DNA of 64,000 bases from Macrostomum hystrix (taxonomy: Eukaryota > Animalia > Platyhelminthes): assembly GCA_950097015.1 (NCBI GenBank), contig CATNEN010000038.1, positions 31,186,001 through 31,250,000 of the forward strand. The letters run 5' to 3'. The translations under genes were made by a program, and so were the position numbers. This document shows, piece by piece, positions 9,500 to 59,072 of the stretch (the first letter of the stretch is position 1; the number at the start of each line of letters is the position of its first letter). The notes beneath the pieces are model-generated. The model did not search any database. It had not been told where the DNA came from and worked only from the letters and a program-made list of their open reading frames with translations.

Positions 9500-11443
9500 C
9501 TAATCTCTCAAAATCAGCGAGCCGCGAATGAAAGCCCTACAAATAGGGCAGGTCTTGAGGGACTTGGCGCACACCGAGCAGCAGACCACGTGACCACAGT
9601 CCAGGAGTAAGATGTTCACCTCCTTGTCCATGCACACCTTGCACGTCTTCCAGTCGTTTGTATCGCGGGGTCTCGGCTGCTGATTCAGAGGCTCCTTGAT
9701 CTCGGCTAGTCTGCTCTCGAAGAATGTCTCGGGATCCTGCGACTGCTGGCGCATGCGGTGGCTCTCGGTGAGCATGAAGTCGAGGAACAGCTCCGATGTG
9801 GCAAAGTCGTCGCCTCGCTGTCTGAGATGCAGCTCTGTGAACAGGCGGACTTGCAGAGCAGAGAATCCGAGCTGAGTGAGCAGTCTCACAACCGGCAGAT
9901 CAGCCCTCGCCTTGATGTCTCTGGCCTCGACTCTGAACTCAACTCCACGCGTGATTGCGAGCGCCTCGTCTGTGCGACGGCTGCGGACTGCGGAGGAGCC
10001 GCCGACACTCACCGCCGAAGCTGCAGCTGACGGATCAGGTGAGTCTCTCTGCACCGATGCAGCGGCACGATGAGCAACTCCGACCTTCGATACGGGAGGC
10101 GACAGTCGGTGCACCGCCTGCACAAAGTCGCTGCCTCGCTCCAACAACACGTGAGCACAGCGAGGTGACCACCGTGCGTGCTGCACCCACACATCATCGT
10201 CGCAGCTCCACTCACTCATGCGGAGTCCACAGCTGAAGCAGCAGGTCGCTCTCTCCTCACTCGAGTAGAAGAAGCCCGCCTTCGCCAGCAAGTACACCGG
10301 CTGCGGAACGAGCGCCGATCGCAGAGACTTTGATCTCTCTTGGTAGCTCTCGAACTGCTCATGTTTGGCAGTCACACTCGATGGGTCCGTCTCCAGACTG
10401 TGCTGCAGAGCGGACAGGTTCGTGAGCGCTCTCTCGGAGCACGCGGATCGAGCCACCTCGCTTGACACTGCCAGCCGAGGACGCCTCGTCAGGTCGAGTG
10501 AGATGAGCTCGTCATGAGCAGCAGCACTCGGTGATCCGTACTGAGCTCGAGTCCACCTCGATCTCACTCCGTCTGTCGCCATCGCCCACTCCGACATCTC
10601 AGTGGGCTCCATGGGAGGCAGCTCAGAGATCAGCCTCATGCTCCAGTCTCCGCTCACCATCACTGCCTCGGCATGTGCGGTGTGCTCAGTGCACAGTACT
10701 GCCTCCACCTGCACTGCCGACCTCGCCTCTCCTTCTGGCTCTCTGTGCTCTCGGGGCACGTTGCCCACATCGACGAACAGCACGAACGGACAGGTCGAGA
10801 AGTGGCGTCTGTGAGCCTCTCGCACCTGCTCACCCGCCTCCCAGTCCTTGAGCACACCCTTGCAGAAGGCGCACTTCACTCTGTCCGACTCCTGCAGGTA
10901 GAAGAATCCGTCAGCAGCCAGATCCGTCACTGACACCAGGTGAGACGCAGTGAATGACGCATCAGGCAGGTGGAAGGACTGCCACCTGTTGTCCTCACGT
11001 CTCATGTCCCACAGGTGCTGAGGAATGGAGGCCGGCATTCCAGTCGTGTCCCATCGCTGATTGCGGAAGTCCAGAGTCTGCGGCACGGACTGAGCTCTGC
11101 CGCCAGGAGTGCTGTTGTTGTAGTACCTCAGCACCTTGCTCCGTGCTGTCTGTATGGAATCCACGCGATTACCAATGTCCTGCCTTAGACTAGATACAAT
11201 TCGCATTCGCTGCTTTGACACATCTGCGTCTGAGGATCGCAGCATGGTTTGAGTCATTTCCTCTGGCCAGTCCGAGTGTTCCAGTTCTCCAACTATAGCA
11301 GAACATTTGACTGCTTCATTATTAGTTCTGTAACTGGCTTCTGTGCCGCCAGTTGGCTGAATTTCTGTGCCGCGATCGCTTCGTTTAAGTAAAGCGAGGA
11401 GTTCGCCGATTTTAGTAGTCGTATCTCTTGGCGGCTTACCCAT
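9500..11443 (-). CDS. Inhibitor-of-apoptosis protein copy 1 (BIR-BIR-UBA-like-RING), 647 aa
   Basis: Two CX2CX16HX6C BIR motifs (CAFC..H..C; CFSC..H..C) each preceded by GFFY; UBA-like segment (QLGFS..GDDF); C-terminal C3HC4 RING CKVCMD..CGH..CC..C..CPICR. Confidence 0.93.
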   Translation of the reverse strand: MGKPPRDTTTKIGELLALLKRSDRGTEIQPTGGTEASYRTNNEAVKCSAIVGELEHSDWPEEMTQTMLRSSDADVSKQRMRIVSSLRQDIGNRVDSIQTARSKVLRYYNNSTPGGRAQSVPQTLDFRNQRWDTTGMPASIPQHLWDMRREDNRWQSFHLPDASFTASHLVSVTDLAADGFFYLQESDRVKCAFCKGVLKDWEAGEQVREAHRRHFSTCPFVLFVDVGNVPREHREPEGEARSAVQVEAVLCTEHTAHAEAVMVSGDWSMRLISELPPMEPTEMSEWAMATDGVRSRWTRAQYGSPSAAAHDELISLDLTRRPRLAVSSEVARSACSERALTNLSALQHSLETDPSSVTAKHEQFESYQERSKSLRSALVPQPVYLLAKAGFFYSSEERATCCFSCGLRMSEWSCDDDVWVQHARWSPRCAHVLLERGSDFVQAVHRLSPPVSKVGVAHRAAASVQRDSPDPSAAASAVSVGGSSAVRSRRTDEALAITRGVEFRVEARDIKARADLPVVRLLTQLGFSALQVRLFTELHLRQRGDDFATSELFLDFMLTESHRMRQQSQDPETFFESRLAEIKEPLNQQPRPRDTNDWKTCKVCMDKEVNILLLDCGHVVCCSVCAKSLKTCPICRAFIRGSLILRD

Positions 11444-11687
11444 TTTTGTCGCTTTATGACAGTAGTACTAAAGGACAGTACTAAAGAAGTCCTTTCAATA
11501 TAGCTGAAATTTTGGGATTGGTTCGTGAGTCTAATACGTTGTTTATAATCTGAATTTTGTTTTGAGCTGCACAAAAACATGTTAAACTCGATTGAACTTG
11601 GACTGGAGTGACTTGTGTTGCTTGAACGGCCTGCTTATTATTTTCACAAGAGCCAGGGTTATGAACATTCCTTTATCTAAGAAATTT

Positions 11688-11940
11688 TAGCCTAGAGCGT
11701 CGGACTCACGACTTGAAGATCGTTGGTTCGATTCCTATCTCAAACGGAATAATTTTTGTCCTTTAGCAAGATTCTCAGCTCTGCATTGCCACTGTTAAAT
11801 GGTTACTTGCAGCATTAGCTGGGGTAATTGAGGGTTGGAGTGGTACCCACCCCTAGTCCATGGACTGAACAGCCGTGCGCAGCCTTTAGAGGCATTGGGC
11901 AATAGCTACGGCTCTGTTGTCTGCCCCGACATCATGCCCA
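11688..11940 (+). mobile_element. SINE family B copy, diverged
   Basis: Homologous to 7684..7990 (gcgtcggactcacgacttgaag..ggttcgattcc..gtcctttagcaaga..cattagctggg..catggactgaacagccg). Confidence 0.75.
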
Positions 11941-12710
11941 ATAGTCGCCTATGGGCCTACTAAACCAACCAAGCGATTTCGATGCACAATAAGCTTATTA
12001 TCAATTTCTCCTTTCAGAGGGGCTTCTTAAGGAGATAACTTTATTATCTGCCATCAATATTTAGATTAAGCACAAGTTTTAAAGCTTACCGCTGATGAAC
12101 AAAGAAGTTTGGAGCCATTCGATGGCCTTGGACGGCGCTCCCGGCTGGCGTATTGGCGGCAAGCAGCTGAAAGGCTTGATGCTTGTTGAAAGGCATGTTC
12201 TAAAAATTATACCTGTTAATAAGCTGTCAGACTCAGCGGTTTAGGGGCAGTTTAAGTTCACAGAAGCCGGATACACTCGTGCGGATCGTTTATTCATGCA
12301 GTGAATCGTTAATCGTTATCGCCAATATCTTTAAATTACAACGTACGAGCGTATAGCCAGCTCAAATGCCGCTTTTCTCCAAGGCCATCGTTTTGACCCG
12401 CTTATCTTTCTTTGTCATCATCGGTGTGAATTTATGCTTGAAAGCTCTGGTGTGAACTAGTGGCTTACTTTGGACCAAACATGATATACGCAGGGTAGGA
12501 TGCTGTTTACTAGGGCCGAGATTGGCACCGTCTTTGGCATCGATTTTTCAAAACTAGTTCGAGTATCAACAAATAACAGTGAAATAAGTTCTGATATACC
12601 ATATACTTCAAATGGTCAGAGAAATAAAAAAGAAGACTTCGATTCGTGATGTTATTCGCTTCCAAGAAAACGCCTTTTATGGTGTTTCTGCATGAATTTC
12701 TAGTTTCCAG

Positions 12711-13070
12711 GTGTGTGGGGTATGGGGATGTTTGCCTCTCGCACCAGTAATGTCGGCCGCGGAGCTCGATTCCGCGGTAATGCCACATTCATTTAAGGCG
12801 CAGACGCGGAGAGAAGGCTTGGGGGATTGTCGTGAAATTTACGCCCTTAAGGGCCAACTTCCAAGGCGCAGCGAAAGTGTACACTCCCTAACGATGAGAA
12901 AGTCAGGGCCGATGTACACACCTGTGTTAGTGCGTGCCTGCGTACAGTATCTGTGTGCGTGTGTGCTCAGAGATCAGCGAAATGGGCAGAATTGCATCCT
13001 CGCTGGCTGCGGATCTAGTGTCACCACATGATGTGCCTGTGCCTCCAGACCTCCAGCAAAAATTATTAAT
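12711..13070 (+). mobile_element. SINE family A copy
   Basis: Reverse-complement homolog of 4847..5182 with a degenerate B box (gctcgattcc). Confidence 0.75.
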
Positions 13071-14331
13071 CATCCGTTTCTGTGCAGCCGGGCTATTTAA
13101 ATTTAGGTAAAGTAGCAGAATTATGCAGCTTACCTGAGCTGTTCAAACAAAATTTGAACCAAAATTCAAACGCTGCCTTGTTTTCAAAATATCAAAATAT
13201 TAATTTTGCTTCAGATTGATGTGCTGTCGCTAGCTGCTGATGCACATATGCTGTGATATCTATATAGAAATATAGATCTATAAATATACAGATATTGTGT
13301 TCCAGAAAATTCCATGATTAGGTTTATTTACAAAATTATTCTATTTTTAGATATTACGACAGCCATTCCCCATAGCAAGGCTGGCTAGGCAAGCAAAGAG
13401 AACGATAGCCTAGTCACGAGGTCAATGTACATATAAGTTGCCTATTGTATGTGTATCACGCATGACTAAAAATAATGCGTGTTTTCCACTACTTAAAATA
13501 ATATTGACTGGGGACAAATGAATGACAACATAAGAAATGCAGTGGATAGCTTACTAACAGTAGAGCTAATTGAACATAGCGCGAATTCCTCGCATGGCGG
13601 CTCTTGGAAAATGCCACTAAATGTATGGGCGTAGAAATAATTAGAGTTCTAATCAACTGGAACTGCTATCTAATCTCACCCGACGGTAAAATCACCGAGA
13701 CTAGCTTTACTGAGTACAGCTGGGCTCAAGGCGAGACAGGGGTAAGGATGGCGGAGGAAGGATCACGGGCGGAAGAGGATGAGGTGGATCAAGGGGGTAG
13801 CATATACTCAAGGGAGAAGGGAGAGAAAGGGGAGAAGTCAGTGAAAGAAGGGGAGTGGTTCTTCTGGCCTCAGGCTAGCCAGTCCCACTCGTCCATTGTT
13901 TCACGAAAAAATTGTTGTGCCTATAAACACCACACCCACACAGGCACGAAAGCAGACACAGAAATTGCGATAACGGCAGAAAACGAGTACGAAATCGGGA
14001 CTGTAAGGATTCTTGAACGCCAACGAGTACGTCATTGCACTCGTGACCCGAGCACGATCCTTTTATTAGGTTTCGTAAATCCTCTCCCTCCCGGAGTAGG
14101 GCAGTTTGAAAAAAATTCGCTGAGGATGATTGATGAGTGGTGATGCCAACCCCATTACTAGTGCATTGCTTTCCGTTGAGCTAGCAGGTTGGCACACAAG
14201 CCACCCCGATTCTGGAGGGTATATGAGAGCCGGGGGAGATTTCGATGTATTGGTTGAGTTAGGAAGTTTTTCCCCAGCCATGTACTATCTTCCCTAAAGT
14301 CCTTTTCCCATTCCCTCTTCATCGATCCGCG

Positions 14332-14490
14332 CTTCCCGATCGTCTCAGGGTACTGTCTCGACTCTGTCCGCCGTCTTCCCGATCGTCTCCGGGTACAGTC
14401 TCGACTCTGTCCGCCATCTTCCCGATCGTCTCCGGGTACTGTCTCGACTCTCTCTCCGCCGTCTTCCCGATCGTCTCCGCGGGTACAGTC
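14332..14490 (+). repeat. 43-bp minisatellite, left block (~3.7 copies)
   Basis: Unit cttcccgatcgtctccgggtacagtctcgactctgtccgccgt. Confidence 0.9.
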
Positions 14491-14744
14491 CAAGGACTAT
14501 TAAACAACACAGGACGTTGCAATCGCGTTTTGTGCAAATTTTTCAGAAGGCTGGCTAAATGATGCTAAAATTAGTCTATGGCATATGCTTTACTCGTATT
14601 AATATATGCACGTAGCTCAAAAGGAAAGCATGTAGTTAAGCCTTTTACTTTTAGTTGTCCTTGTTTGCTTTTCTATCTTAGTTCGTTATCCGTTTTTTAG
14701 GTCTGCAGAAGACAGATGATTTATCTGACTTTGGTTTTCGCATC

Positions 14745-15095
14745 ATGCCAAGAAAATGCTGTGTAAAAGGCTGCAAGAGCAACTATGACAGTGGAGAGAG
14801 ATGTACTGTCTATAGTTTCCCGCGGGACGAACGAGAAGCGAGCATTTGGATGACGGCTTTACCGACGTACTCATCGGTGAGCATCAAAATGTTAACTATA
14901 TAAATAGAATGTGTAAACGGAATGTTTTTATAAGTCAACTTTTTGTTTTTTGTAATTGACCGTTGTGTTAATCGTACACAGAAAGCAACAAAGTACATGG
15001 GTGTTTGTAAAAAGCACTGGCCTGACAACGCACGGATGCTCAAGGTGAAGAATCACACACGTCCGATCGATCCACCATCTGTGTTTCATTGCGCT
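14745..15095 (+). pseudogene. Spliced THAP (C2CH) DNA-binding domain; 5' fragment of a DNA-transposon gene, join(14745..14876,14982..~15095)
   Basis: MPRKCCVKGCKSNYDSGERCTVYSFPRDEREASIWMTALPTYSS|gtgag..acag|KATKYMGVCKKHWPDNARMLKVKNHTRPIDPPSVF shows the THAP hallmarks C-x4-C, FP, W, C-x2-H and P-x-VF; it then runs into the minisatellite. Confidence 0.8.
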
Positions 15096-15103
15096 CCATA
15101 TAG

Positions 15104-15272
15104 CGTCTTCCCGATCGTCTCCGGGTACAGTCTTGACTCTCTCCAGCCGTCTTCCCAGTCGTCTCAGTGTACAGGCTCGACTAACTCCGGCCGTCTTCGC
15201 GATCGTCTCCGGGTACAGTCTCGACTATCTCCAGCCGATTTCCCGATCGTCTCAGGGTACACTCTCGACTGT
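15104..15272 (+). repeat. 43-bp minisatellite, right block (same family and orientation as 14332..14490)
   Basis: cgtcttcccgatcgtctccgggtacagtct.gactc.. about 4 diverged copies. Confidence 0.85.
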
Positions 15273-16133
15273 AGTCATCTAAAAATTAAAAAACAGATGT
15301 AAAAGATGAATGTGTGAAAAGTATGAGGTATTCGATGAGGATACTTAAGTAGAACTGAAATAAAACCTAAAGTGAACTAGAAGTACAATCACATCTAAAC
15401 GCCTACCATATATTAGCCTGCAATATCATACACGGATTAAACTCGTGGCAAACCATTTAAAGTCAAGATTGGTTGCCTTAACTTGTTGGCAATAGCAGAG
15501 AGTGCGTCGAATAACGAGTGTTTTTGTACAGTTTTATTGAAATCCGTGCCTCAATGCATGCGCCTGAAGGTGTTGCTGCAGTAAACGGTAAACGGGCTTT
15601 TACGGTCTCGCTGAGTACACACCGAAGAAATATAGAGAACCCACTGCATTCGTAAATTGTACGCAGAATTGCATTCAGAAATGGAAACACTGTTCGTCAT
15701 TTCTATTTTTAGAAGAAGTTATATAAATAAACTTACAAATTTATACCAGAAAAATCTAGATCTTAAAGTGGATCTGATTATTTATCTAAATAAAGCATGT
15801 AATAATTAACCAAAACTATATATAATGATTGGCAGAAGAGTCTAAATAATTACACATTAGTTTCCACAGAAGAACGACAATTTGTTCACGAACATCCAGC
15901 TGAAACACTTGCAGCACAGAAGAATTATAAAATATAGTAGCAGACCCGACGACGCAAGCTCTAATTCAACAAGCTTCATCACCTCGTGAGTCCGTCATTA
16001 AAAGCAGTCACATGCTATTATAACAGACCTGACGCTTAGATTTCACCATATCTTTGATGAAAATAAAAATGTAAAAAAAGTTATTTTTTTATTTTTTTAA
16101 GCAACAACTCAGCAGTCGCTAACAACACCAAGA

Positions 16134-18125
16134 ATGGCAGCCAGTTCATGGCATGACTACACAGCGCGATGGCTTCGTCGACATGACTCCAACAGAGCGG
16201 CACCTACCGAGGAAAATGCGCCACAGGCCGTCCAGCAAGTGTACGCCGAAATAACAAGTGTCGAAGTGTCTAAATATCCACAGCGAATAACTACCACAAT
16301 GGTCGAAAGGGCAGTCGCAGAAGGATACAAAACGGATCTAAAAAAGGCCCTTTTGAAACTGGCTTATTTTTCAACCCAAATTAACAACCACTCTCGAAAT
16401 GAGGCAACAAGAATCGACATCCACGGTCCAGAAATTCCAGGACTGTCTTCAAGTATAGCAAGAAGCAAGGTGCTGAGGTACTACAACAACAGCACTCCTG
16501 GTGGCAGAGCTCAGTCCGTGCCGCAGACTCTGGACTTCCGCAATCAGCGATGGGACACGACTGGAATGCCGGCCTCCATTCCTCAGCACCTGTGGGACAT
16601 GAGACGTGAGGACAACAGGTGGCAGTCCTTCCACCTGCCTGATGCGTCATTCACTGCGTCTCACCTGGTGTCAGTGACGGATCTGGCTGCTGACGGATTC
16701 TTCTACCTGCAGGAGTCGGACAGAGTGAAGTGCGCCTTCTGCAAGGGTGTGCTCAAGGACTGGGAGGCGGGTGAGCAGGTGCGAGAGGCTCACAGACGCC
16801 ACTTCTCGACCTGTCCGTTCGTGCTGTTCGTCGATGTGGGCAACGTGCCCCGAGAGCACAGAGAGCCAGAAGGAGAGGCAAGGTCGGCAGTGCACGTGGA
16901 GGCAGTGCAGTGCACTGAGTACACCGCACATGCCGAGGCAGTGATGGTGAGCGGAGACTGGAGCATGAGGCTGATCTCTGATCTGCCTCCCATGGAGCCC
17001 ACTGAGATGTCGGAGTGGGCGATGGCGACAGATGGAGTGAGATCGAGGTGGACTCGAGCTCAGTACGGATCACCGAGTGCTGCTGCTCATGACGAGCTCA
17101 TCTCACTCGACCTGACGAGGCGTCCTCGGCTGGCAGTGTCAAGCGAGGTGGCTCGATCCGCGTGCTCCGAGAGAGCGCTCACGAACCTGTCCGCTCTGCA
17201 GCACAGTCTGGAGACGGACCCATCGAGTGTGACTGCCAAACATGAGCAGTTCGAGAGCTACCAAGAGAGATCAAAGTCTCTGCGATCGGCACTCGTTCCG
17301 CAGCCGGTGTACTTGCTGGCGAAGGCGGGCTTCTTCTACTCGAGTGAGGAGAGAGCGACCTGCTGCTTCAGCTGTGGACTCCGCATGAGTGAGTGGAGCT
17401 GCGACGATGATGTGTGGGTGCAGCACGCACGGTGGTCACCTCGCTGTGCTCACGTGTTGTTGGAGCGAGGCAGCGACTTTGTGCAGGCGGTGCACCGACT
17501 GTCGCCTCCCGTGTCGCCTCCCGTGTCGAAGGTCGGAGTTGCTCGTCGTGCCGCTGCATCGGTGCAGAGAGACTCACCTGATCCGTCAGCTGCAGCTTCG
17601 GCGGTGAGTGTCGGCGGCTCCTCCGCAGTCCGCAGCAGTCGCACAGACGAGGCGCTCGCAATCACGCGTGGAGTTGAGTTCAGAGTCGAGGCCAGAGACA
17701 TCAAGGCGAGGGCTGATCTGCCGGTTGTGAGACTGCTCACTCAGCTCGGATTCTCTGCTCTGCAAGTCCGCCTGTTCACAGAGCTGCATCTCAGACAGCG
17801 AGGCGACGACTTTGCCACATCGGAGCTGTTCCTCGACTTCATGCTCACCGAGAGCCGCCGCATGCGCCAGCAGTCGCAGGATCCCGAGACATTCTTCGAG
17901 AGCAGACTGGCCGAGATCAAGGAGCCTCTGAATCAGCAGCCGAGACCCCGCGATACAAACGACTGGAAGACATGCAAGGTGTGCATGGACAAGGAGGTGA
18001 ACATCTTGCTCCTGGACTGTGGTCACGTGGTCTGCTGCTCGGTGTGCGCCAAGTCCCTCAAGACCTGCCCCATCTGCAGAGCCTTTATCAGGGGTTCGTT
18101 GTGCTTGAATCGAAGCGGGCTGTGA
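16134..18125 (+). CDS. IAP copy 2 (BIR-BIR-UBA-like-RING), 663 aa
   Basis: Same domain motifs; core from 16464 near-identical to the other copies; unique ~110-aa N-terminus; AATAAA at ~18323. Confidence 0.93.
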   Translation: MAASSWHDYTARWLRRHDSNRAAPTEENAPQAVQQVYAEITSVEVSKYPQRITTTMVERAVAEGYKTDLKKALLKLAYFSTQINNHSRNEATRIDIHGPEIPGLSSSIARSKVLRYYNNSTPGGRAQSVPQTLDFRNQRWDTTGMPASIPQHLWDMRREDNRWQSFHLPDASFTASHLVSVTDLAADGFFYLQESDRVKCAFCKGVLKDWEAGEQVREAHRRHFSTCPFVLFVDVGNVPREHREPEGEARSAVHVEAVQCTEYTAHAEAVMVSGDWSMRLISDLPPMEPTEMSEWAMATDGVRSRWTRAQYGSPSAAAHDELISLDLTRRPRLAVSSEVARSACSERALTNLSALQHSLETDPSSVTAKHEQFESYQERSKSLRSALVPQPVYLLAKAGFFYSSEERATCCFSCGLRMSEWSCDDDVWVQHARWSPRCAHVLLERGSDFVQAVHRLSPPVSPPVSKVGVARRAAASVQRDSPDPSAAASAVSVGGSSAVRSSRTDEALAITRGVEFRVEARDIKARADLPVVRLLTQLGFSALQVRLFTELHLRQRGDDFATSELFLDFMLTESRRMRQQSQDPETFFESRLAEIKEPLNQQPRPRDTNDWKTCKVCMDKEVNILLLDCGHVVCCSVCAKSLKTCPICRAFIRGSLCLNRSGL

Positions 18126-20360: not shown

Positions 20361-21161
20361 TATAAGAGATACTCTCGTAGTTGGTAAAATCAACAAAGGC
20401 ATGATGCACATATGCCAAGCTTTAGTAAATTATATTAACTCGTATTCTGTGCTCAAAGCGCATATTTTATAGCTCGGAAAGAGAATAGATTTTAGCGACA
20501 GACCTTGACTGCATGCTTGAAGTGTCCTTAGAATTAGAGGAGCTACAGGGACTACTGTACATATATTTTGCTATATCACCAACACAATGATTTACAACTC
20601 GTCATACAATAAAACTCATCATAAATGTTCACAGGAATACAATACATGCATAAAACATATTTCAATAGCCGTCTAATACTATTTTTAAGTACTCGTACAA
20701 GGATTGAATTTTACGATATATTCAAATGTTTAGTAAAATTCAGGAAAATTGTAAAAAACATATAAACCGACTACTCAACTCGGAAAGTGCATTGCTAGGC
20801 AAAAAAGCATTCAAAGCGTTAGTGACATTAAATCAATAAGTAATGGCAGAAGTATGTAACTCCTATAACATGACTGTTTGAACCTTTACACAGAAGTTAT
20901 TACCAATGCCTACTGCAGGACGAGAGTAGCTAAAACGCTGATAGCAGAAAAATATATTTCTGAATTTCACTTTGTAGCAAAATGCAAAGAACAGAAAATT
21001 AAACTGCTAAAAAGTAAAACCTAAGTAAACCAGCGAGAAGCACATGATCATAAAAGAAAAAATATGATTGCATTGAACTAAATTTTAGAATTTTCAATGA
21101 AAAGCAAATAACTTCAAATAATATTGGAACCTTTTAGACCAAGCCCAAGAGCCCATTGAAG

Positions 21162-23069
21162 CTAATCTCTCAAAATCAGCGAGCCGCGAATGAAAGCTCT
21201 GCAAATAGGGCAGGTCTTGAGGGACTTGGCGCACACCGAGCAGCAGGCCACGTGACCACAGTCCAGGAGCAAGATGTTCACCTCCTTGTCCATGCACACC
21301 TTGCACGTCTTCCAGTCGTTTGTATCGCGGGGTCTCGGCTGCTGATTCAGAGGCTCCTTGATCTCGACCAGTCTGCTCTCGAAGAATGTCTCGGGATCCT
21401 GCGACTGCTGGCGCATGCGGCGGCTCTCGGTGAGCATGAAGTCGAGGAACAGCTCCGATGTGGCAAAGTCGTCGCCTCGCTGTCTGAGATGCAGCTCTGT
21501 GAACAGGCGGACTTGCAGAGCAGAGAATCCGAGCTGAGTGAGCAGTCTCACAACCGGCAGATCAGCCCTCGCCTTGATGTCTCTGGCCTCGACTCTGAAC
21601 TCAACTCCACGCGTGATTGCGAGCGCCTCGTCTGTGCGACTGCTGCGGACTGCGGAGGAGCCGCCGACACTCACCGCCGAAGCTGCAGCTGACGGATCAG
21701 GTGAGTCTCTCTGCACCGATGCAGCGGCACGATGAGTAACTCCGACCTTCGATACGGGAGGCGACACGGGAGGCGACAGTCGGTGCACCGCCTGCACAAA
21801 GTCGCTGCCTCGCTCCAACAACACGTGAGGACAGCGAGGTGACCACCGTGCGTGCTGCACCCACACATCATCGTCGCAGCTCCACTCACTCATGCGGAGT
21901 CCACAGCTGAAGCAGCAGGTCGCTCTCTCCTCACTCGAGTAGAAGAAGCCCGCCTTCGCCAGCAAGAACACCGGCTGCGGAACGAGCGCCGATCGCAGAG
22001 ACTTTGATCTCTCTTGGTAGCTCTCGAACTGCTCATGTTTGGCAGTCACACTCGATGGGTCCGTCTCCAGACTGTGCTGCAGAGCGGACAGGTTCGTGAG
22101 CGCTCTCTCGGAGCACGCGGATCGAGCCACCTCGCTTGACACTGCCAGCCGAGGACGCCTCGTCAGGTCGAGTGAGATGAGCTCGTCATGAGCAGCAGCA
22201 CTCGGTGATCCGTACTGAGCTCGAGTCCACCTCGATCTCACTCCGTCTGTCGCCATCGCCCACTCCGACATCTCAGTGGGCTCCATGGGAGGCAGCTCAG
22301 AGATCAGCCTCATGCTCCAGTCTCCGCTCACCATCACTGCCTCGGCATGTGCGGTGTGCTCAGTGCACAGTACTGCCTCCACCTGCACTGCCGACCTCGC
22401 CTCTCCTTCTGGCTCTCTGTGCTCTCGGGGCACGTTGCCCACATCGACGAACAGCACGAACGGACAGGTCGAGAAGTGGCGTCTGTGAGCCTCTCGCACC
22501 TGCTCACCCGCCTCCCAGTCCTTGAGCACACCCTTGCAGAAGGCGCACTTCACTCTGTCCGACTCCTGCAGGTAGAAGAATCCGTCAGCAGCCAGATCCG
22601 TCACTGACACCAGGTGAGACGCAGTGAATGACGCATCAGGCAGGTGGAAGGACTGCCACCTGTTGTCCTCACGTCTCATGTCCCACAGGTGCTGAGGAAT
22701 GGAGGCCGGCATTCCAGTCGTGTCCCATCGCTGATTGCGGAAGTCCAGAGTCTGCGGCACGGACTGAGCTCTGCCGCCAGGAGTGCTGTTGTTGTAGTAC
22801 CTCAGCACCTTGCTTTGACCATTTTGAGAACGAATTTCTTCACCTATTGGATAGGATTGTCTTAGTTGAGCTACCAGTATCATTCTTTGCCTTGAAATTC
22901 CCTTGTCTGTTATGATAAGCAAGTTGCTTAGAAGATCGTTAACGATATCACTTAGAATTCGCTTTTCTTCCTGGTTGTTACTGCTGTAGTCTAGACTTTG
23001 TCTTTCGGGCTTATTTTCTTTTTGTACTAATAGTAGATGTAAAGCGGCTATCGAGACTTTTGTAGACAT
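21162..23069 (-). CDS. IAP copy 3 (BIR-BIR-UBA-like-RING); probable start at the second Met (23069), ORF extends to 23117
   Basis: Same motifs. Acceptor-like tttcag (23084) lies 14 nt before the ATG at 23069. Shares tail SLILRD and ~80 bp of 3' flank with copy 1. Confidence 0.92.
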   Translation of the reverse strand: MSTKVSIAALHLLLVQKENKPERQSLDYSSNNQEEKRILSDIVNDLLSNLLIITDKGISRQRMILVAQLRQSYPIGEEIRSQNGQSKVLRYYNNSTPGGRAQSVPQTLDFRNQRWDTTGMPASIPQHLWDMRREDNRWQSFHLPDASFTASHLVSVTDLAADGFFYLQESDRVKCAFCKGVLKDWEAGEQVREAHRRHFSTCPFVLFVDVGNVPREHREPEGEARSAVQVEAVLCTEHTAHAEAVMVSGDWSMRLISELPPMEPTEMSEWAMATDGVRSRWTRAQYGSPSAAAHDELISLDLTRRPRLAVSSEVARSACSERALTNLSALQHSLETDPSSVTAKHEQFESYQERSKSLRSALVPQPVFLLAKAGFFYSSEERATCCFSCGLRMSEWSCDDDVWVQHARWSPRCPHVLLERGSDFVQAVHRLSPPVSPPVSKVGVTHRAAASVQRDSPDPSAAASAVSVGGSSAVRSSRTDEALAITRGVEFRVEARDIKARADLPVVRLLTQLGFSALQVRLFTELHLRQRGDDFATSELFLDFMLTESRRMRQQSQDPETFFESRLVEIKEPLNQQPRPRDTNDWKTCKVCMDKEVNILLLDCGHVACCSVCAKSLKTCPICRAFIRGSLILRD

Positions 23070-23179
23070 GTTGCAGGATTTTGCTGAAATTTTATAAAAG
23101 TATAACCTATAGAACATTTATGCAACAGTACGACCTAAGATATTAAAAATATAAATAAAAAAATAACTTTATTTACTCA

Positions 23180-24681: not shown

Positions 24682-26306
24682 CTGAAACATAAATTTTGTT
24701 ATCTGGTAGACTGGTACTATGTATTCATTTTATTGACTACTTATACTTTTATATTAAAGGCTAATTCACACTGCCAAGGCTAGAACACACACAGATATAC
24801 TTTAGTAACAATAATAGCTACTTAAAAGGGCAATCAGCCCAGACCTAGTGAAAACCTATTCTAGTCCAGTTTATACTTGCTATTGTCATTGACACTCCTA
24901 ACTAGCTATAGGCTGGCCTATAGTTTAGGCTATAATTTATATAGCCTAACTGGGCTATAATAGGCTAGAACTTAGCAGCTTTATGATGTACTGTGGTGCA
25001 CAATTAATTAAAACCAACTAACAAAAAAGTTTGTTTTATATATTTTATAGCCTAGGCTAGGGCAGGCCTATAGCCAATAATAGCCAATATAGACAACTTG
25101 TCAAATTATAAGCAAAAAAGGACAGAACAAGACACTTTTTAATAGCCTAGATAGAATGAGAAAATTTTAGTTGCCAGTCGAGTCGAGTGTAGTCTACATA
25201 GGCCTACTAGGCCTAATTGCTAAAATTAGGCCAACTGCATGATAACAAGTGTTATACAGCTAGTTTGGAATGTCAGATTGGGTGAAAGGTGTGTAGACGT
25301 GACTCGTGATCGTGAGGTTGGCGGAATTTTAAGTTTTTGAGGGTTTCAGTCGGCGCAACAAAAGTTCGGTAAGGGGTAAAACACTACCCGAAAAATAGGG
25401 TAAAAGGCTACCCAATGATTTTAGGCGTCTACCCGCTTCAAATCGTCCAGAAAATGCGCCTAACCTATGCAGCTTCTAGTTTGGAATTTTCTTAGGTAAA
25501 AAACTGAAAGATTATGATGAAATTCACGTTTATTTCTGTTGGTAGTGTTTTACTCCAAAAAGCTACCCAAAACTACCCGACCCCTACCCCCGTCATTGAG
25601 AATCGAAAATCAATGGCTAAGCTTACTTTTACATCTTCTGCCATAATGTGTAATATCAAGTGGTTTTAACTTGCATAAGCAAAGTTAGGGTAATGGGTAA
25701 TTTGTTTTACTGTATTTTACTTTCGCATTTTTTAAACGTATAAATCTTAATCTTATTTAGAAACGCTAAACGAATAATATTGCCAAGATTCATATACAAT
25801 GTTATAAGAAATAATGCAGCTTTTTCAGTTCGAAAGCTACGATACTGCAGGTGTAGTGAAATTGCGATAATCTTTTCTTATCGTGTCAGTGATTTCTAAT
25901 CTGAGTTTTGGCCAACAACACACTAAGGTGATATATTATCAAAGTGCATCTAACTTAATAGACTTTATAATTCCGTTAACTAAATAATCTTATATAAACA
26001 GCAATAAAAACTTATGTCCATTTATCTATAGTAATATCAACAGCTATACATATATAAATATAGAACTACAAAAGTAATTATGCCTTATGCACATTGTTTT
26101 TATGTTATAAATAAAAAATATCAATATACCTTGAGGACATTGAGGTTTCAAATAAATTTATTCAAAGCAATTGAACATATTTTATATAAATTTAAACAGT
26201 ATTTGATTGCTGATTTGATTTGTTTTTCTGTTTTTATATGCATAAGACAACAATTATTTGCTTAAATATTATTAATATATTATTTCTCTTAATATAATAT
26301 ATTTTT

Positions 26307-27630
26307 AGTTGGTGTACAGTTGGCGTCAGTTGGTTTCTCCTGTAGTCCCTATTTGGTTGAGTTGGTGCACAGTTGGCATCAGTTGGTTTCTCCTACTGTA
26401 GTCTCTATTTAGTTGAGATGGTGCACAGTTGGCATCAGTTGGTTTCTCCCACTTTAGTCTCTATTTAATTAAGTTGGTGTACAGTTGGCGTCAGTTGGTT
26501 TCTCCTACTGTAGTCTCTATTTAGTTGAGTTGGTGCACAGTTGGCATCAGTTGGTTTCTCCTACTGTAGTCTCTATTTAGTTGAGATGGTGCACAGTTGG
26601 CATCAGTTGGTTTCTCCTACTGTAGTCTCTATTTAGTTGAGATGGTGTACAGTTGGCATCAGTTGGTTTCTCCTACTGTAGTCCCTATTTATTTGAATTG
26701 GTGCACAGTTGGCATCAGTTGGTTTCTCCTACTTTAGTCCCTATTTATTTGAATTGGTGCACAGTTGGCATCAGTTGGTTTCTCCTACTGTAGTCTCTAT
26801 TTAGTTGAGATGGTGTACAGTTGGCATCAGTTGGTTTCTCCTACTGTAGTCCCTATTTATTTGAATTGGTGCACAGTTGGCATCAGTTGGTTTCTCCTAC
26901 TGTAGTCTCTATTTAGTTGAGATGGTGTACAGTTGGCATCAGTTGGTTTCTCCTACTGTAGTTCCTTTTTAGTTGAGTTGGTGTACAGTTGGCATCAGTT
27001 GGTTTCTCCTACTGTAGTCCCTATTTAGTTGAATTGGTGCACAGTTGGCATCAGTTGGTTTCTCCTACTGTAGTCTCTATTTAATTAAGTTGGTGTACAG
27101 TTGGCGTCAGTTGGTTTCTCCTACTGTAGTCTCTATTTAGTTGAGATGGTGCACAGTTGGCATCAGTTGGTTTCTCCCACTTTAGTCTCTATTTAATTAA
27201 GTTGGTGTACAGTTGGCGTCAGTTGGTTTCTCCTACTGTAGTCTCTATTTAGTTGAGTTGGTGCACAGTTGGCATCAGTTGGTTTCTCCTACTGTAGTCT
27301 CTATTTAGTTGAGATGGTGTACAGTTGGCATCAGTTGGTTTCTCCTACTGTAGTCCCTATTTATTTGAATTGGTGCACAGTTGGCATCAGTTGGTTTCTC
27401 CTACTTTAGTCCCTATTTAGTTGAATTGGTGCACAGTTGGCATCAGTTGGTTTCTCCTACTGTAGTCTCTATTTAATTAAGTTGGTGTACAGTTGGCGTC
27501 AGTTGGTTTCTCCTGTAGTCCCTATTTGGTTGAGTTGGTGTACAGTTGGCGTCAGTTGGTTTCTTCTACTGTAGTCCCTTTTTAGTTGAGTTGGTGTACA
27601 GTTGGCGTCAGTTGGTTTCTCCTACTGTAC
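26307..27630 (+). repeat. 56-bp tandem repeat, inner domain of the left TIR (~23 copies)
   Basis: Unit agttggcatcagttggtttctcctactgtagtctctatttagttgagatggtgcac. Confidence 0.95.
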
Positions 27631-27707
27631 CAGTTTGTTATTTTGACTTCAGTCAGTATAATTCTAATTTTTTGGTACAATCAGTTTTCATTCCCTTTAC
27701 ATTTCAG

Positions 27708-28658
27708 TTGCGTCTATTGGCATCCAAACCAGAGGCAGCATTGCCTCCTTCTGGGCAAAATGTTCCTTGTCCAGAATCACCATGTATTGTTGTGTTTAAG
27801 TCGGATGGTATTGATATTTTAGAGGCCTCTCGGCGCCTTTGTAGCTGCATTCGGAACCTAACTCGTCGTAATGTCCGTGTATATTCAGACGCTGGTTATC
27901 GTCGATGCGGACGTGAAAAGGTTGCTGTTATTCAGAATTTGAGTAGCTCGTCAACTTCTGTGTTTTTGCACGGAATCAGTGGGAACGCCACTGTAGATAA
28001 TGATCATCGCCAGAATGGCTTCGAATGGCTACAACGTTTTGAAGCCCCGCCTCGCCCTTTTAACCGCGGACAGCTAAAATGGAAGCAGCATCTTTTGGCC
28101 ACTTTTCGGTGGCTAATCATGGAAGGCGACCCAGGCACATTAAGAACTTTGTCTGCCCTTTCAAACGCTCTATCTACAACGCTGCGTCTGCGAATTCGTC
28201 GTCGTCGTAATCAATTAGTACTGCCAAGATCTGACCAGGCAAGTAATCACCAACCGGGACATGAACGTCACGATGAACTCATTGATTTGAATGAGGAACT
28301 AGAGGACTCAGACAAAACAGCGGATGGCCAGCAGGGCGCTGACAAGCCAGCCAATGAACAGCAGGGCGCTGACAAGCCAGCGGATGGCCAGCAGGGCACT
28401 GACAAGCCAGCCAATGAACAGCAGGGCGCTGACAAGCCAGCGGATGGCCAGCAGGGCGCTGACAAGCCAGCCGATGACCAGCAGAGCGCTGACAAGCCAG
28501 CCGATGACCAGAATTTGGACACGGGAGGATCAAGCCACTCAGAAAATTGTCCGCCGGTGCCACGAAAGAGAGTGCATGAAAGCAAGAAACGGCCTAAACT
28601 TTTAGGAACGGAAAAAGCCGGTCCTCATGTGTCCAAACGACAACTACGACGACGCTAA
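27708..28658 (+). CDS. Unknown ORF/terminal exon inside the Foldback element, with 10-aa DKPADGQQGA repeats and a basic C-terminus
   Basis: About 315 open codons after acceptor-like tttacatttcag. The ORF-track start at 27546 lies in the tandem repeat and is probably spurious. 30-nt repeats at ~28310-28510; KRPK/KRQLRRR NLS-like tail. Confidence 0.5.
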   Translation: MRLLASKPEAALPPSGQNVPCPESPCIVVFKSDGIDILEASRRLCSCIRNLTRRNVRVYSDAGYRRCGREKVAVIQNLSSSSTSVFLHGISGNATVDNDHRQNGFEWLQRFEAPPRPFNRGQLKWKQHLLATFRWLIMEGDPGTLRTLSALSNALSTTLRLRIRRRRNQLVLPRSDQASNHQPGHERHDELIDLNEELEDSDKTADGQQGADKPANEQQGADKPADGQQGTDKPANEQQGADKPADGQQGADKPADDQQSADKPADDQNLDTGGSSHSENCPPVPRKRVHESKKRPKLLGTEKAGPHVSKRQLRRR

Positions 28659-30980: not shown

Positions 30981-31086
30981 GATATCAAACAGCTAGGTAC
31001 TTGATATATTTTCGCATGTATTTCGTCAACTTTTCTAGGTCACTTTCCAGGTTAATAAAATCGAGTAGAATTCATTTGAAATCATG

Positions 31087-32402
31087 AAACCAACTGATGC
31101 CAACTGTGCACCAACTCAACTAAATAGAGACTACAGTAGGAGAAACCAACTGACGCCAACTGTACACCAACTTAATTAAATAGAGACTAAAGTGGGAGAA
31201 ACCAACTGATGCCAACTGTGCACCATCTCAACTAAATAGAGACTACAGTAGGAGAAACCAACTGATGCCAACTGTGCACCAATTCAACTAAATAGGGACT
31301 ACAGTAGGAGAAACCAACTGATGCCAACTGTACACCAACTCAACTAAAAAGGAACTACAGTAGGAGAAACCAACTGATGCCAACTGTACACCATCTCAAC
31401 TAAATAGAGACTACAGTAGGAGAAACCAACTGATGCCAACTGTGCACCAATTCAACTAAATAGGGACTACAGTAGGAGAAACCAACTGATGCCAACTGTG
31501 CACCAATTCAAATAAATAGGGACTAAAGTAGGAGAAACCAACTGATGCCAACTGTGCACCAATTCAAATAAATAGGGACTACAGTAGGAGAAACCAACTG
31601 ATGCCAACTGTACACCATCTCAACTAAATAGAGACTACAGTAGGAGAAACCAACTGATGCCAACTGTGCACCAATTCAACTAAATAGGGACTACAGTAGG
31701 AGAAACCAACTGATGCCAACTGTGCACCAATTCAACTAAATAGGGACTACAGTAGGAGAAACCAACTGATGCCAACTGTGCACCAATTCAAATAAATAGG
31801 GACTAAAGTAGGAGAAACCAACTGATGCCAACTGTGCACCAATTCAAATAAATAGGGACTACAGTAGGAGAAACCAACTGATGCCAACTGTACACCATCT
31901 CAACTAAATAGAGACTACAGTAGGAGAAACCAACTGATGCCAACTGTGCACCAACTCAACTAAATAGAGACTACAGTAGGAGAAACCAACTGACGCCAAC
32001 TGTACACCAACTTAATTAAATAGAGACTACAGTAGGAGAAACCAACTGATGCCAACTGTGCACCAATTCAACTAAATAGGGACTACAGTAGGAGAAACCA
32101 ACTGATGCCAACTGTACACCAACTCAACTAAAAAGGAACTACAGTAGGAGAAACCAACTGATGCCAACTGTACACCATCTCAACTAAATAGAGACTACAG
32201 TAGGAGAAACCAACTGATGCCAACTGTGCACCAATTCAAATAAATAGGGACTAAAGTAGGAGAAACCAACTGATGCCAACTGTGCACCAATTCAACTAAA
32301 TAGGGACTACAGTAGGAGAAACCAACTGATGCCAACTGTGCACCAACTCAACCAAATAGGGACTACAGGAGAAACCAACTGACGCCAACTGTACACCAAC
32401 TA
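31087..32402 (-). repeat. 56-bp tandem repeat, inner domain of the right TIR (~23 copies)
   Basis: Reverse complement of the 26307..27630 unit; the order of variants differs between arms. Confidence 0.95.
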
Positions 32403-45842: not shown

Positions 45843-45889
<47 letters not shown>

Positions 45890-51800: not shown

Positions 51801-51847
51801 GAGGAGGAGTTTAGCTCGTATCTCTAAATATACTAAAATTCACGTGT

Positions 51848-51878
<31 letters not shown>

Positions 51879-57059: not shown

Positions 57060-59072
57060 TCAAGTATTTATGAAAACCACACCCCTGATAAAGGCTCTGC
57101 AGATGGGGCAGGTCTTGAGGGACTTGGCGCACACCGAGCAGCAGGCCACGTGACCACAGTCCAGGAGTAAGATGTTCACCTCCTTGTCCATGCACACCTT
57201 GCACGTCTTCCAGTCGTTTGTATCGCGGGGTCTCGGCTGCTGATTCAGAGGCTCCTTGATCTCGGCCAGTCTGCTCTCGAAGAATGTCTCGGGATCCTGC
57301 GACTGCTGGCGCATGCGGCGGCTCTCGGTGAGCATGAAGTCGAGGAACAGCTCCGATGTGGCAAAGTCGTCGCCTCGCTGTCTGAGATGCAGCTCTGTGA
57401 ACAGGCGGACTTGCAGAGCAGAGAATCCGAGCTGAGTGAGCAGTCTCACAACCGGCAGATCAGCCCTCGCCTTGATGTCTCTGGCCTCGACTCTGAACTC
57501 AACTCCACGCGTGATTGCGAGCGCCTCGTCTGTGCGACTGCTGCGGACTGCGGAGGAGCCGCCGACACTCACCGCCGAAGCTGCACCTGACGGATCAGGT
57601 GAGTCTCTCTGCACCGATGCAGCGGCACGATGAGTAACTCCGACCTTCGACACGGGAGGCGACAGTCGGTGCACCGCCTGCACAAAGTCGCTGCCTCGCT
57701 CCAACAACACGTGAGCACAGCGAGGTGACCACCGTGCGTGCTGCACCCACACATCATCGTCGCAGCTCCACTCACTCATGCGGAGTCCACAGCTGAAGCA
57801 GCAGGTCGCTCTCTCCTCACTCGAGTAGAAGAAGCCCGCCTTCGCCAGCAAGTACACCGGCTGCGGAACGAGTGCCGATCGCAGAGACTTTGATCTCTCT
57901 TGGTAGCTCTCGAACTGCTCATGTTTGGCAGTCACACTCGATGGGTCCGTCTCAAGACTGTGCTGCAGAGCGGACAGGTTCGTGAGCGCTCTCTCGGAGC
58001 ACGCGGATCGAGCCACCTCGCTTGACACTGCCAGCCGAGGACGCCTCGTCAGGTCGAGTGAGATGAGCTCGTCATGAGCAGCAGCACTCGGTGATCCGTA
58101 CTGAGCTCTAGTCCACCTCGATCTCACTCCGTCTGTCGCCATCGCCCACTCCGACATCTCAGTGAGCTCCATGGGAGGCAGCTCAGAGATCAGCCTCATG
58201 CTCCAGTCTCCGCTCACCATCACTGCCTCGGCATGTGCGGTGTGCTCAGTGCACAGTACTGCCTCCACCTGCACTGCCGACCTCGCCTCTCCTTCTGGCT
58301 CTCTGTGCTCTCGGGGCACGTTGCCCACATCGACGAACAGCACGAACGGACAGGTCGAGAAGTGGCGTCTGTGAGCCTCTCGCACCTGCTCACCCGCCTC
58401 CCAGTCCTTGAGCACACCCTTGCAGAAGGCGCACTTCACTCTGTCCGACTCCTGCAGGTAGAAGAATCCGTCAGCAGCCAGATCCGTCACTGACACCAGG
58501 TGAGACGCAGTGAATGACGCATCAGGCAGGTGGAAGGACTGCCACCTGTTGTCCTCACGTCTCATGTCCCACAGGTGCTGAGGAATAGAGGCCGGCATTC
58601 CAGTCGTGTCCCATCGCTGATTGCGGAAGTCCAGAGTCTGCGGCACGGACTGAGCTCTGCCACCAGGAGTGCTGTTGTTGTAGTACCTCAGCACCTTGCT
58701 TCTTGCATTTTGAATCATGGTTCTGCTATCAATTAAGCCTATCGAATCTTCCTGTCTAAGGGCAGCAGCAATTAGCATTCGTCTCTTGTTCATTTCCTTG
58801 TCTGCGATGGCTGTCAATTGGAGAATAGTAAGCCAAGTTTTTGAATCATGGTGTGCTGCTGCATTGTTGTGTTCCGGCTGAGCCCTGAGGAACTCATCGG
58901 TGGGCATTAGGGCATTGCTTGTAAATTCAAAATCTCTCATGTCAATATCAGTTCTGGGTTGGTCTGAATAATTCATGTAGCTTATGATGTCCTCGCGGGC
59001 TGCTCTGCGAAACCCGGAATCAAACTGCCAGTTACGCACATGTTGAACATTTGCTACTCGTAGGTCTGACAT
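57060..59072 (-). CDS. IAP copy 4 (BIR-BIR-UBA-like-RING), 670 aa
   Basis: Same motifs; core (57085..58700) near-identical to the other copies; unique ~124-aa N-terminus; tail VVFINT. Confidence 0.93.
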   Translation of the reverse strand: MSDLRVANVQHVRNWQFDSGFRRAAREDIISYMNYSDQPRTDIDMRDFEFTSNALMPTDEFLRAQPEHNNAAAHHDSKTWLTILQLTAIADKEMNKRRMLIAAALRQEDSIGLIDSRTMIQNARSKVLRYYNNSTPGGRAQSVPQTLDFRNQRWDTTGMPASIPQHLWDMRREDNRWQSFHLPDASFTASHLVSVTDLAADGFFYLQESDRVKCAFCKGVLKDWEAGEQVREAHRRHFSTCPFVLFVDVGNVPREHREPEGEARSAVQVEAVLCTEHTAHAEAVMVSGDWSMRLISELPPMELTEMSEWAMATDGVRSRWTRAQYGSPSAAAHDELISLDLTRRPRLAVSSEVARSACSERALTNLSALQHSLETDPSSVTAKHEQFESYQERSKSLRSALVPQPVYLLAKAGFFYSSEERATCCFSCGLRMSEWSCDDDVWVQHARWSPRCAHVLLERGSDFVQAVHRLSPPVSKVGVTHRAAASVQRDSPDPSGAASAVSVGGSSAVRSSRTDEALAITRGVEFRVEARDIKARADLPVVRLLTQLGFSALQVRLFTELHLRQRGDDFATSELFLDFMLTESRRMRQQSQDPETFFESRLAEIKEPLNQQPRPRDTNDWKTCKVCMDKEVNILLLDCGHVACCSVCAKSLKTCPICRAFIRGVVFINT

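What the first reader, a model, noticed from the sequence alone, without database searches (positions are those of the whole stretch)
9500..59072. Four IAP genes with a constant core and variable N-termini: sharply bounded concerted evolution
Seen: from codons AGC AAG (SKVLRYY; 11140, 16464, 22814, 58700) to ACC TGC CC in the RING, the copies are near-identical in DNA over ~1.6 kb, synonymous sites included, and are GC-rich. Just upstream they switch to 85-125 aa of unalignable, AT-richer coding DNA within the same exon, with no splice site. Copies 1, 3 and 4 still share a residual motif there (DADVSKQRMRIVSSLRQ / DKGISRQRMILVAQLRQ / DKEMNKRRMLIAAALRQ); copy 2 lacks it. Inference: these are old paralogs, not fresh duplicates. 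The BIR-BIR-UBA-RING module is being homogenised by gene conversion, even with the copy 34 kb away, while the N-terminus is excluded and diversifies. This resembles a constant-effector/variable-specificity design. IAP expansions are known in invertebrates; I do not know this architecture from them.
Basis: partly seen in the sequence, partly recalled or inferred. Interest (0 to 1): 0.85.

Follow-up and report, generated by a model that had tools for sequence, protein, structure and literature searches.

The report
Flatworm IAP genes homogenised by gene conversion
Seven neighbouring cell-death-inhibitor (IAP) genes of a Macrostomum flatworm are old, diverged copies whose 1.6-kb middle is kept almost identical by DNA copying between them, which is a clean new example of a well-known process rather than a new mechanism.

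Summary
Four intact single-ORF BIR-BIR-RING genes share a 1595-1607 nt core that is 97-99.4% identical. The core starts at AGC AAG and ends at ACC TGC CC. Outside it the DNA is unalignable.

The whole genome holds seven such copies, not four, all within 137 kb of one contig.

The copies are old:
- In the 9 codons after the core the protein is unchanged, yet 7-9 codons differ synonymously between copy types.
- The N-termini keep only a weak colinear motif, also present in M. lignano.

The N-termini are coding: 0 stops in 809 in-frame codons, against 55 and 56 in the other frames.

Exchange within the core is reticulate: 28 of 55 informative site pairs fail the four-gamete test, and the best of 945 trees needs 23 steps for 13 characters. 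Contigs of three public DNA runs show about 7.5-fold depth on the core and cross an N-terminus/core junction without differences, so the assembly is not at fault.

Best reading: interlocus gene conversion, stopped where homology ends.

Corrections: a UBA domain is not confirmed, and core GC3 (0.71) is normal for this genome. One pair also shares 172 nt of N-terminus.

Other IAP pairs here show the same pattern, and the scan has noted it on other DNA of this genome. The functional "variable specificity" idea is untested, and no RNA evidence was available.

The parts
9500..11443 (-). IAP copy 1 (c1), 647 aa, single ORF. C-terminal tail 9500-9545, homogenised core 9546-11140, N-terminal segment 11141-11443. 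BIR1 about 10781-10978, BIR2 about 10133-10351, RING 9524-9649.
16134..18125 (+). IAP copy 2 (c2), 663 aa. N-terminal segment 16134-16463 (motif weak), core 16464-18070, tail 18071-18125.
   Evidence: DNA contigs of 3 runs cross 16463/16464 with 0 differences.
21162..23117 (-). IAP copy 3 (c3), 651 aa. Tail 21162-21207, core 21208-22814, N-terminal segment 22815-23117.
57060..59072 (-). IAP copy 4 (c4), 670 aa. Tail 57060-57105, core 57106-58700, N-terminal segment 58701-59072.
58701..58872 (-). Proximal N-terminal 172 nt of c4. It is 96.5% identical to the outside copy g7 (C38:31277637-31279249) and ends in a second sharp break. This is either a conversion tract that reached past the common border or a relic of a later duplication.
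9412..9545 (-). Tail plus start of the 3' flank of c1. It is 87% identical over 134 nt to c3 (21080-21207), whereas the cores of the same pair differ at 9 of about 1600 sites. The same gene pair therefore carries segments of different age.
9519..9545 (-). 3' 'rim' of c1: the 9 codons P-ICRAFIRG just outside the core. The protein is identical in nearly all copies, but 7-9 of the 9 codons differ synonymously between type A (g1, c1, c3) and type B (c2, c4). The equivalent rims are c2 18071-18097, c3 21181-21207 and c4 57079-57105. The border falls between the last two zinc-binding cysteines of the RING.

Best explanation
A cluster of seven intronless BIR-BIR-RING IAP genes in a Macrostomum flatworm evolves in concert. 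The copies duplicated long ago, probably at or before the split from M. lignano. Since then, repeated non-reciprocal recombination (interlocus gene conversion) between copies in both orientations, up to about 135 kb apart, has overwritten the 1.6-kb middle of each gene with the sequence of its neighbours. Tracts stop where alignable homology stops. At the 5' end that is where the strongly constrained protein region begins (SKVLRYY). At the 3' end it is 27 nt before the point where the tails become unrelated. Because the flanks can no longer pair, the borders are fixed and sharp. Each gene therefore keeps its own promoter region, its own ~100-130 aa N-terminus and its own 6-9 aa C-terminal end on a shared BIR-BIR-RING body. 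What is shown: the identity step, the age of the flanks, the coding status of the N-termini, the mosaic of variants, and that the copy number is real. What is inferred: the molecular pathway (heteroduplex or SDSA blocked by heterology), and that selection on the N-termini helped to set the 5' border.
For: Core identity is 97-99.4% with mean pS 0.030 and pN 0.0086, while the flanks are unalignable. The rim codons keep the protein, but 7-9 of 9 differ synonymously between types. The N-termini share a colinear but only ~27% identical motif, also with M. lignano P0001 (E 8e-6) and P0005 (profile match 10-176). The N-termini have 0 stops in 809 in-frame codons against 55 and 56 in the other frames. 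Of 55 informative site pairs, 28 fail the four-gamete test. The best of all 945 trees needs 23 steps for 13 informative characters, where about 1.4 double hits are expected. A 3-nt deletion is shared by the two most distant copies, and a 12-nt indel is shared by c1, c4 and g7. c1 and c3 are identical over the first 828 columns and carry all 9 of their differences after that. Core proteins group by species with 100/100 support: 98% identical within this species, 77-81% to the M. lignano copies P0001-P0004 and 72.5-74% to P0005. The copies are not embedded in larger duplicated blocks and lie in both orientations, so unequal crossing-over cannot explain the pattern. In the reads, single-copy depth is about 76 against 570 on the core, private variants of copy g6 occur at single-copy depth, and the N-terminus/core junction of c2 is crossed with 0 differences in three DNA runs from two studies. 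The same partial homogenisation occurs in three other IAP pairs of this genome.
Against: Tract detection inside the core is weak: the longest-run permutation test gives a best global p of about 0.07, and the PHI-like test is not significant. Clustering of cores by species would also fit independent recent expansions if the N-termini evolved extremely fast. No long reads and no RNA were available.
Confidence: 0.85

Rival explanations
1. The variable N-terminal segments are not part of the mature protein. Transcripts would start, splice or trans-splice at or inside the core (for example with translation from the Met of GMPASIPQ), so the 'variable N-termini' would be an ORF-reading illusion. The core would still be homogenised.
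For: Three M. lignano database models begin exactly at KSKVLRYY and one at MPASIPQ. Macrostomum uses SL trans-splicing (own knowledge; also a scan note). N-terminal GC3 of 0.32-0.51 resembles non-coding DNA. The only possible RNA run showed the core alone.
Against: There are 0 stops in 809 in-frame codons against 55 and 56 in the other frames, and the frame closes 0-14 codons upstream of the first ATG in six of the seven copies. The motif is conserved across copies and in M. lignano P0001 and P0005, whose models include the N-terminus in one ORF. The truncated models lack a start Met and look partial. No conserved acceptor is present at the border.
Confidence: 0.1
2. Only the core was copied recently, as a partial-gene duplication into unrelated sites, and each copy recruited a new N-terminus and tail from the local DNA.
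For: The borders are the same in all seven copies, the flanks are unrelated, and the N-termini have a non-coding-like composition.
Against: The tail supplies the last RING cysteine and the conserved ICRAFIRG in every copy, using different codons, so it is homologous and old. The N-termini share a colinear motif among themselves and with M. lignano. The c1/c3 and c4/g7 pairs share extra flank segments of different ages.
Confidence: 0.04
3. Assembly or polishing artefact: the real cores are more diverged and were homogenised or collapsed in silico.
For: Repeats of 1.6 kb at 97-99% identity can be mis-polished, and no long reads were examined here.
Against: Each copy has private substitutions and in-frame indels. 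In unitig contigs of public runs the core path has about 7.5 times the single-copy depth, matching 7 copies, and private variants of g6 and g1 appear at single-copy depth. Junction contigs match with 0 differences in three DNA runs of two studies. An artefact could not create the drop from ~100% to noise-level identity at the borders.
Confidence: 0.03
4. Very recent whole-gene duplications, followed by explosive divergence of everything except the core.
For: Cores group by species.
Against: Non-coding flanks and the synonymous sites of the rim cannot become saturated while synonymous sites of the core stay at pS 0.03.
Confidence: 0.02

Closest known systems
Region-limited gene conversion in clustered protocadherin variable exons (Noonan et al. 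2004, as reviewed in PMC3966226)
   Same: The paralogues lie in one cluster. One part of the coding exon is homogenised, giving very short branches, while the rest stays highly diverse. It is interpreted as conversion opposed by selection outside the homogenised part.
   Different: Here the genes are separate and intronless, each with its own promoter, and lie in both orientations. The homogenised part is most of the protein (both BIRs and most of the RING). The diverse part is a short, probably helical or disordered N-terminus rather than a recognition ectodomain. No function is known for the variable part.
RHCE/RHD and similar two-locus conversion-versus-selection cases (Innan 2003, cited in PMC3966226; theory in PMC3924837)
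   Same: Polymorphism is shared and divergence is low across most of the gene. Fixed divergence is confined to one segment that conversion does not erase.
   Different: Here there are seven loci rather than two. The diverged segments are beyond alignment rather than a cluster of fixed differences. No population data are available.
Rodent Naip (BIRC1) paralogues
   Same: They are IAP-family paralogues whose coding and intronic sequences were proposed to be homogenised by gene conversion, which obscures orthology (PMC1781489).
   Different: Naip proteins are NLR-type, with three BIRs, NACHT and LRR and no RING. Their identity is about 90% and not sharply bounded inside an exon.
Lineage-specific IAP expansions in molluscs, insects and crustaceans (PMC13159474)
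   Same: These also show tandem or proximal clusters of BIR-RING genes, including intronless tandem arrays.
   Different: That survey does not mention gene conversion or concerted evolution (0 occurrences). It also reports RING-containing IAPs as lost in Platyhelminthes. This free-living flatworm has seven BIR-BIR-RING genes in this cluster and further RING-bearing BIR genes elsewhere.

Membership tests
IAP (BIR-containing, RING-type E3) family | At least one BIR zinc-binding domain (CX2C...H...C) | tested here: met
   Pfam PF00653 matches two stretches per protein at E about 1e-26. A profile of the proteins matches XIAP BIR2 and BIR3 and cIAP1 BIR3 chains in the PDB.
IAP (BIR-containing, RING-type E3) family | C-terminal C3HC4 RING | tested here: met
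   PF13920 matches at E about 2e-13. RING chains of cIAP1, cIAP2 and XIAP are matched in the PDB.
   No UBA family is found at E<=5. The segment alone finds no UBA chain in the PDB. The AF2 model is too poor to judge the fold (mean pLDDT 34). A divergent helical UBA-like bundle is not excluded.
IAP (BIR-containing, RING-type E3) family | Caspase or IBM binding and E3 ligase activity | not testable with these tools
   This needs biochemistry.
Concerted evolution by interlocus gene conversion | Near-identity that includes synonymous sites and is sharply bounded against old, diverged flanks of the same genes | tested here: met
Concerted evolution by interlocus gene conversion | Mosaic or phylogenetically incompatible variants among copies | tested here: met
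   28 of 55 site pairs are incompatible. There are 10 extra steps on the best of 945 trees.
Concerted evolution by interlocus gene conversion | Statistically significant pairwise tracts (GENECONV-type test) | tested here: inconclusive
   The best global p is about 0.07, for c1-c3 over columns 1-828. Power is low with only 67 polymorphic sites.
Concerted evolution by interlocus gene conversion | Converted parts group by species while unconverted parts group by locus across species | tested here: inconclusive
   Cores group by species at 100/100. The N-terminus of g1 aligns best to M. lignano P0001 (27% over 92 aa, E 8e-6), and tail types recur in both species. The signal is weak, and M. lignano DNA could not be fetched.
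Concerted evolution by interlocus gene conversion | The copies are real, not an assembly artefact | tested here: met
   Read-contig depth is about 7.5 times single copy, private variants occur at single-copy depth, and junction contigs match exactly. Long reads were not examined.

The most novel reading that the evidence does not exclude
The cluster may be a selected 'one body, many heads' repertoire. Seven different N-terminal modules, each with its own promoter, would direct an identical BIR-BIR-RING ubiquitin-ligase body to different partners, compartments or degradation signals. Conversion would keep the effector uniform, and selection would keep the heads apart. That would be a diversification logic not yet described for regulators of cell death, in an animal known for regeneration. 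A wider version is that this flatworm genome has an unusually high rate of short-tract interlocus conversion, shaping many gene families in the same way.
Probability: 0.2. Interest if true: 0.65.

Novelty: new member of a known kind. Interest (0 to 1): 0.4.

Why it matters
This is a very clean natural example of how gene conversion and loss of homology together carve a gene into a shared part and private parts. The border is resolved to the nucleotide. The rim also serves as an internal clock: the protein is unchanged there while synonymous sites are saturated.

It also shows that RING-bearing IAPs exist, and are expanded, in a free-living flatworm. A 2026 survey based on parasitic species concluded that they were lost in Platyhelminthes (PMC13159474).

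There are two practical consequences. Phylogenies of these genes built from the BIR or RING parts will wrongly suggest recent species-specific expansion. Copy-specific probes, RNAi triggers or primers must target the N-termini.

Tried and rejected
- **Recombination tests:** a PHI-like neighbour-incompatibility test was not significant. A GENECONV-like longest-run test was marginal.
- **gBGC as the cause of the GC-rich core:** rejected, because core GC3 equals that of other BIR genes in this genome.
- **Larger segmental duplications around the genes:** none found. Only tandem minisatellites appeared in a 154-kb self-comparison.
- **Search for protein fragments carrying the N-terminus/core junction:** none found.
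- **Profile search of 1.84 billion representatives with N-terminus plus linker:** only M. lignano clusters were found.
- **AF2 model from 12 sequences:** unusable, mean pLDDT 34.
- **RNA evidence:** the only possible RNA run held the core at low depth and no N-terminus, so it is uninformative.
- **Rfam on the window:** no match.
- **Literature on Macrostomum IAPs or gene conversion:** nothing specific.

Full report
**Observation.** The window holds four long ATG ORFs at 9500-11443(-), 16134-18125(+), 21162-23117(-) and 57060-59072(-). Each encodes two BIR domains and a C-terminal C3HC4 RING. The proteins are identical at almost every position from SKVLRYY to ICRAFIRG and unalignable before that.

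At the DNA level, identity in 100-nt windows rises from about 0.3 (noise level) to 0.95-1.00 and falls back just as abruptly. It ends at ACC TGC CC and is 1595-1607 nt long.

**Extent.** A search of the whole assembly (220 Mb, 42 contigs; the window is C38:31186001-31250000) finds seven copies of the core and no others. All lie between 31.142 and 31.279 Mb of contig C38, two on the + strand and five on the - strand. All seven ORFs are intact. The only length differences are in-frame indels of 3 nt, 3 nt and 12 nt. A self-comparison of 154 kb around the cluster shows that the genes are not part of larger duplicated blocks. The intervening DNA is unique sequence or minisatellite.

**Organism and family.** The nearest database proteins are seven Macrostomum lignano IAP-like proteins at 68-79% identity. 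Everything else is at most 57% identical, and only over short BIR/RING stretches. The genome is therefore a Macrostomum species other than M. lignano. An earlier scan note names M. hystrix, which I did not test.

The genome holds at least 20 further BIR loci. A 2026 survey of metazoan IAPs reports RING-containing IAPs as lost in Platyhelminthes and does not discuss gene conversion. That survey evidently sampled parasitic species only.

**Are the copies old?** Three lines of evidence say yes.
- In the 9 codons just outside the 3' border (P-ICRAFIRG) the protein is the same, but 7-9 of the 9 codons differ synonymously between type A (g1, c1, c3) and type B (c2, c4). This rim includes the last zinc-binding cysteine of the RING, so it cannot be newly recruited sequence.
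- The N-termini retain a colinear motif (IADKxxSKQRMxIAxxLRQ) at only about 25-45% amino-acid identity and with different codons. The same N-terminal family is found in M. lignano. The g1 N-terminus aligns to P0001 at 27% over 92 aa with E 8e-6. An N-terminus-plus-linker profile matches P0005 over profile positions 10-176.
- The same gene pair carries segments of different age. c1 and c3 differ at 9 of about 1600 core sites, are 87% identical over 134 nt of tail and 3' flank, and are unalignable upstream.

**Are the N-termini coding?** The 809 in-frame N-terminal codons of the seven copies contain no stop, against 55 and 56 stops in the other two frames. Non-coding DNA just upstream has 4-11 stops per 100 codons. 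The frame closes 0-14 codons upstream of the first ATG in six of the seven copies. The N-termini are therefore maintained as coding sequence. Their GC3 of 0.32-0.51 is low. The core's GC3 of 0.71 is ordinary for BIR genes in this genome, which range from 0.50 to 0.81. The 'GC-rich core' is thus not a signature of biased conversion.

**Exchange within the core.**
- There are 67 polymorphic sites in 1610 columns. Mean pS is 0.030 and mean pN is 0.0086, which indicates purifying selection.
- Fifty-six of the 67 are singletons.
- Of the 55 pairs of informative sites, 28 show all four gametes.
- Exhaustive parsimony over all 945 trees needs 23 steps for 13 informative characters. Only about 1.4 double hits are expected by chance.
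- A 3-nt deletion is shared by the two most distant copies, and a 12-nt indel is shared by c1, c4 and g7.
- c1 and c3 are identical over the first 828 columns and carry all nine of their differences after that.

This is the reticulate pattern expected from repeated short conversion tracts. Formal run-length and PHI-like tests are only marginal, for lack of polymorphic sites.

**Species comparison.** Core proteins form one clade per species with 100/100 support. They are 97.4-99% identical within this genome, 77-81% identical to the M. lignano copies P0001-P0004 and 72.5-74% to P0005. The N-termini of paralogues within this genome are no more alike than g1 is to M. lignano P0001. Tail types (VLFL, VVF[IV], GT.L.I) recur in both species. 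This fits paralogues at least as old as the species split with the cores homogenised in each lineage.

**Assembly check.** Contigs from public runs were laid on 10900-16899.
- In the best DNA run, single-copy stretches have depth of about 76 and the shared core path has 570. That is about 7.5-fold, matching seven copies.
- A contig crosses from the c2 N-terminus into the core (15038-16484) with no differences in three DNA runs from two studies.
- Private variants of g6 and g1 appear as separate paths, those of g6 at single-copy depth.
- The one possible RNA run held only the core at low depth, so it says nothing about the N-termini.
- Long reads were not available.

**Mechanism.** The copies lie in both orientations, are separated by unrelated DNA, and are homogenised only internally. 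Unequal crossing-over is therefore excluded, and non-reciprocal exchange (gene conversion) is the only adequate process.

The 5' border coincides with the point where strong protein conservation begins, also between species. Upstream of it the sequence has diverged beyond pairing. At the 3' end only 27 nt of codon-wobbled homology remain before the tails become unrelated. I infer that heteroduplex or branch migration is blocked by heterology. Every tract that reaches the edge then ends at the same base, and the border is self-maintaining.

The border is not absolute. c4 and g7 share a further 172 nt of N-terminus at 96.5%, ending in a second sharp break.

**Generality.** Three other IAP pairs elsewhere in this genome show the same partial homogenisation:
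- C39:9.46 Mb, 1173 nt at 99.7%. Identity again begins a few codons upstream of the LRYY motif, and here it ends before the RING.
- C39:10.35 Mb, 465 nt at 99.4%.
- C5:1.13 Mb, 1135 nt at 98%.

The scan's own notes list many similar cases in other gene families of this genome. Those are unchecked leads, but they agree with what I tested in the IAP family.

**Comparison with known cases.** Region-limited conversion opposed by divergence elsewhere is established for protocadherin variable exons and for RHCE/RHD. It was also proposed for rodent Naip paralogues, which are themselves IAPs. This finding is a new and very clean member of that kind, not a new kind.

The idea that the N-termini confer different specificities on a constant effector is attractive but untested. 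The AF2 model was unusable, a UBA domain could not be confirmed, and no expression data were available.

**Verdict.** Gene conversion among old paralogues is strongly supported, with confidence 0.85. The functional design reading remains open. Interest is moderate.

Noticed in passing
window 34328-55815: About eleven arrays (0.5-2 kb each, spaced 2-3 kb apart) of a 15-nt minisatellite, TGAGGCGATGGGAGA. They produce strong GC skew (up to 0.72) and long spurious ORFs on the minus strand that read (HRLIS)n. This looks like a higher-order repeat between IAP copies 3 and 4.
   Followed up: partly
window 25355-27619 and 31086-33355: A large inverted repeat at 96% identity, made mostly of 56-nt tandem arrays (about 23 units each). 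It flanks about 3.5 kb that holds a 370-codon open frame at 27546-28658.
   Followed up: no
window 11700-11900 and 12700-13100: Two short stretches between c1 and c2 have summed read-contig depth of 10^5-10^6, against about 76 for single-copy DNA. Many variant contigs and joints map there, so they are extremely abundant dispersed repeats. There is no Rfam match.
   Followed up: no
G000 C39:9458791-9463548 (L048), C39:10352733-10358765 (L049), C5:1132702-1137041 (L051): Other IAP gene pairs show the same internally bounded near-identity: 1173 nt at 99.7%, 465 nt at 99.4% and 1135 nt at 98%. In L048 the N-termini and the RINGs differ while both BIRs are shared.
   Followed up: partly
whole genome G000; window genes: This flatworm has seven BIR-BIR-RING genes in this cluster, further RING-bearing BIR genes elsewhere, and about 25 BIR loci in all. 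A 2026 survey states that RING-containing IAPs were lost in Platyhelminthes (PMC13159474).
   Followed up: partly
G000 C7:12920506-12921819 (L030, L052): The closest paralogue outside the cluster (BIR-BIR-RING, 71% DNA identity over 140 nt) has its open frame starting in the middle of BIR1, so it probably has an intron there. The cluster genes have none in the CDS. This hints that the cluster descends from a retrocopy.
   Followed up: partly
window 2981-4017: A tandem array of a 47-nt unit, 22 copies at 95% match.
   Followed up: no
C38:31280986-31282962 and 31288025-31290000 (beyond the window end): Two direct repeats of 1977 nt at 99.95% identity, 7 kb apart, next to copy g7. They are probably the LTRs of a young retrotransposon. 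A scan note describes an LTR element in this neighbourhood.
   Followed up: no
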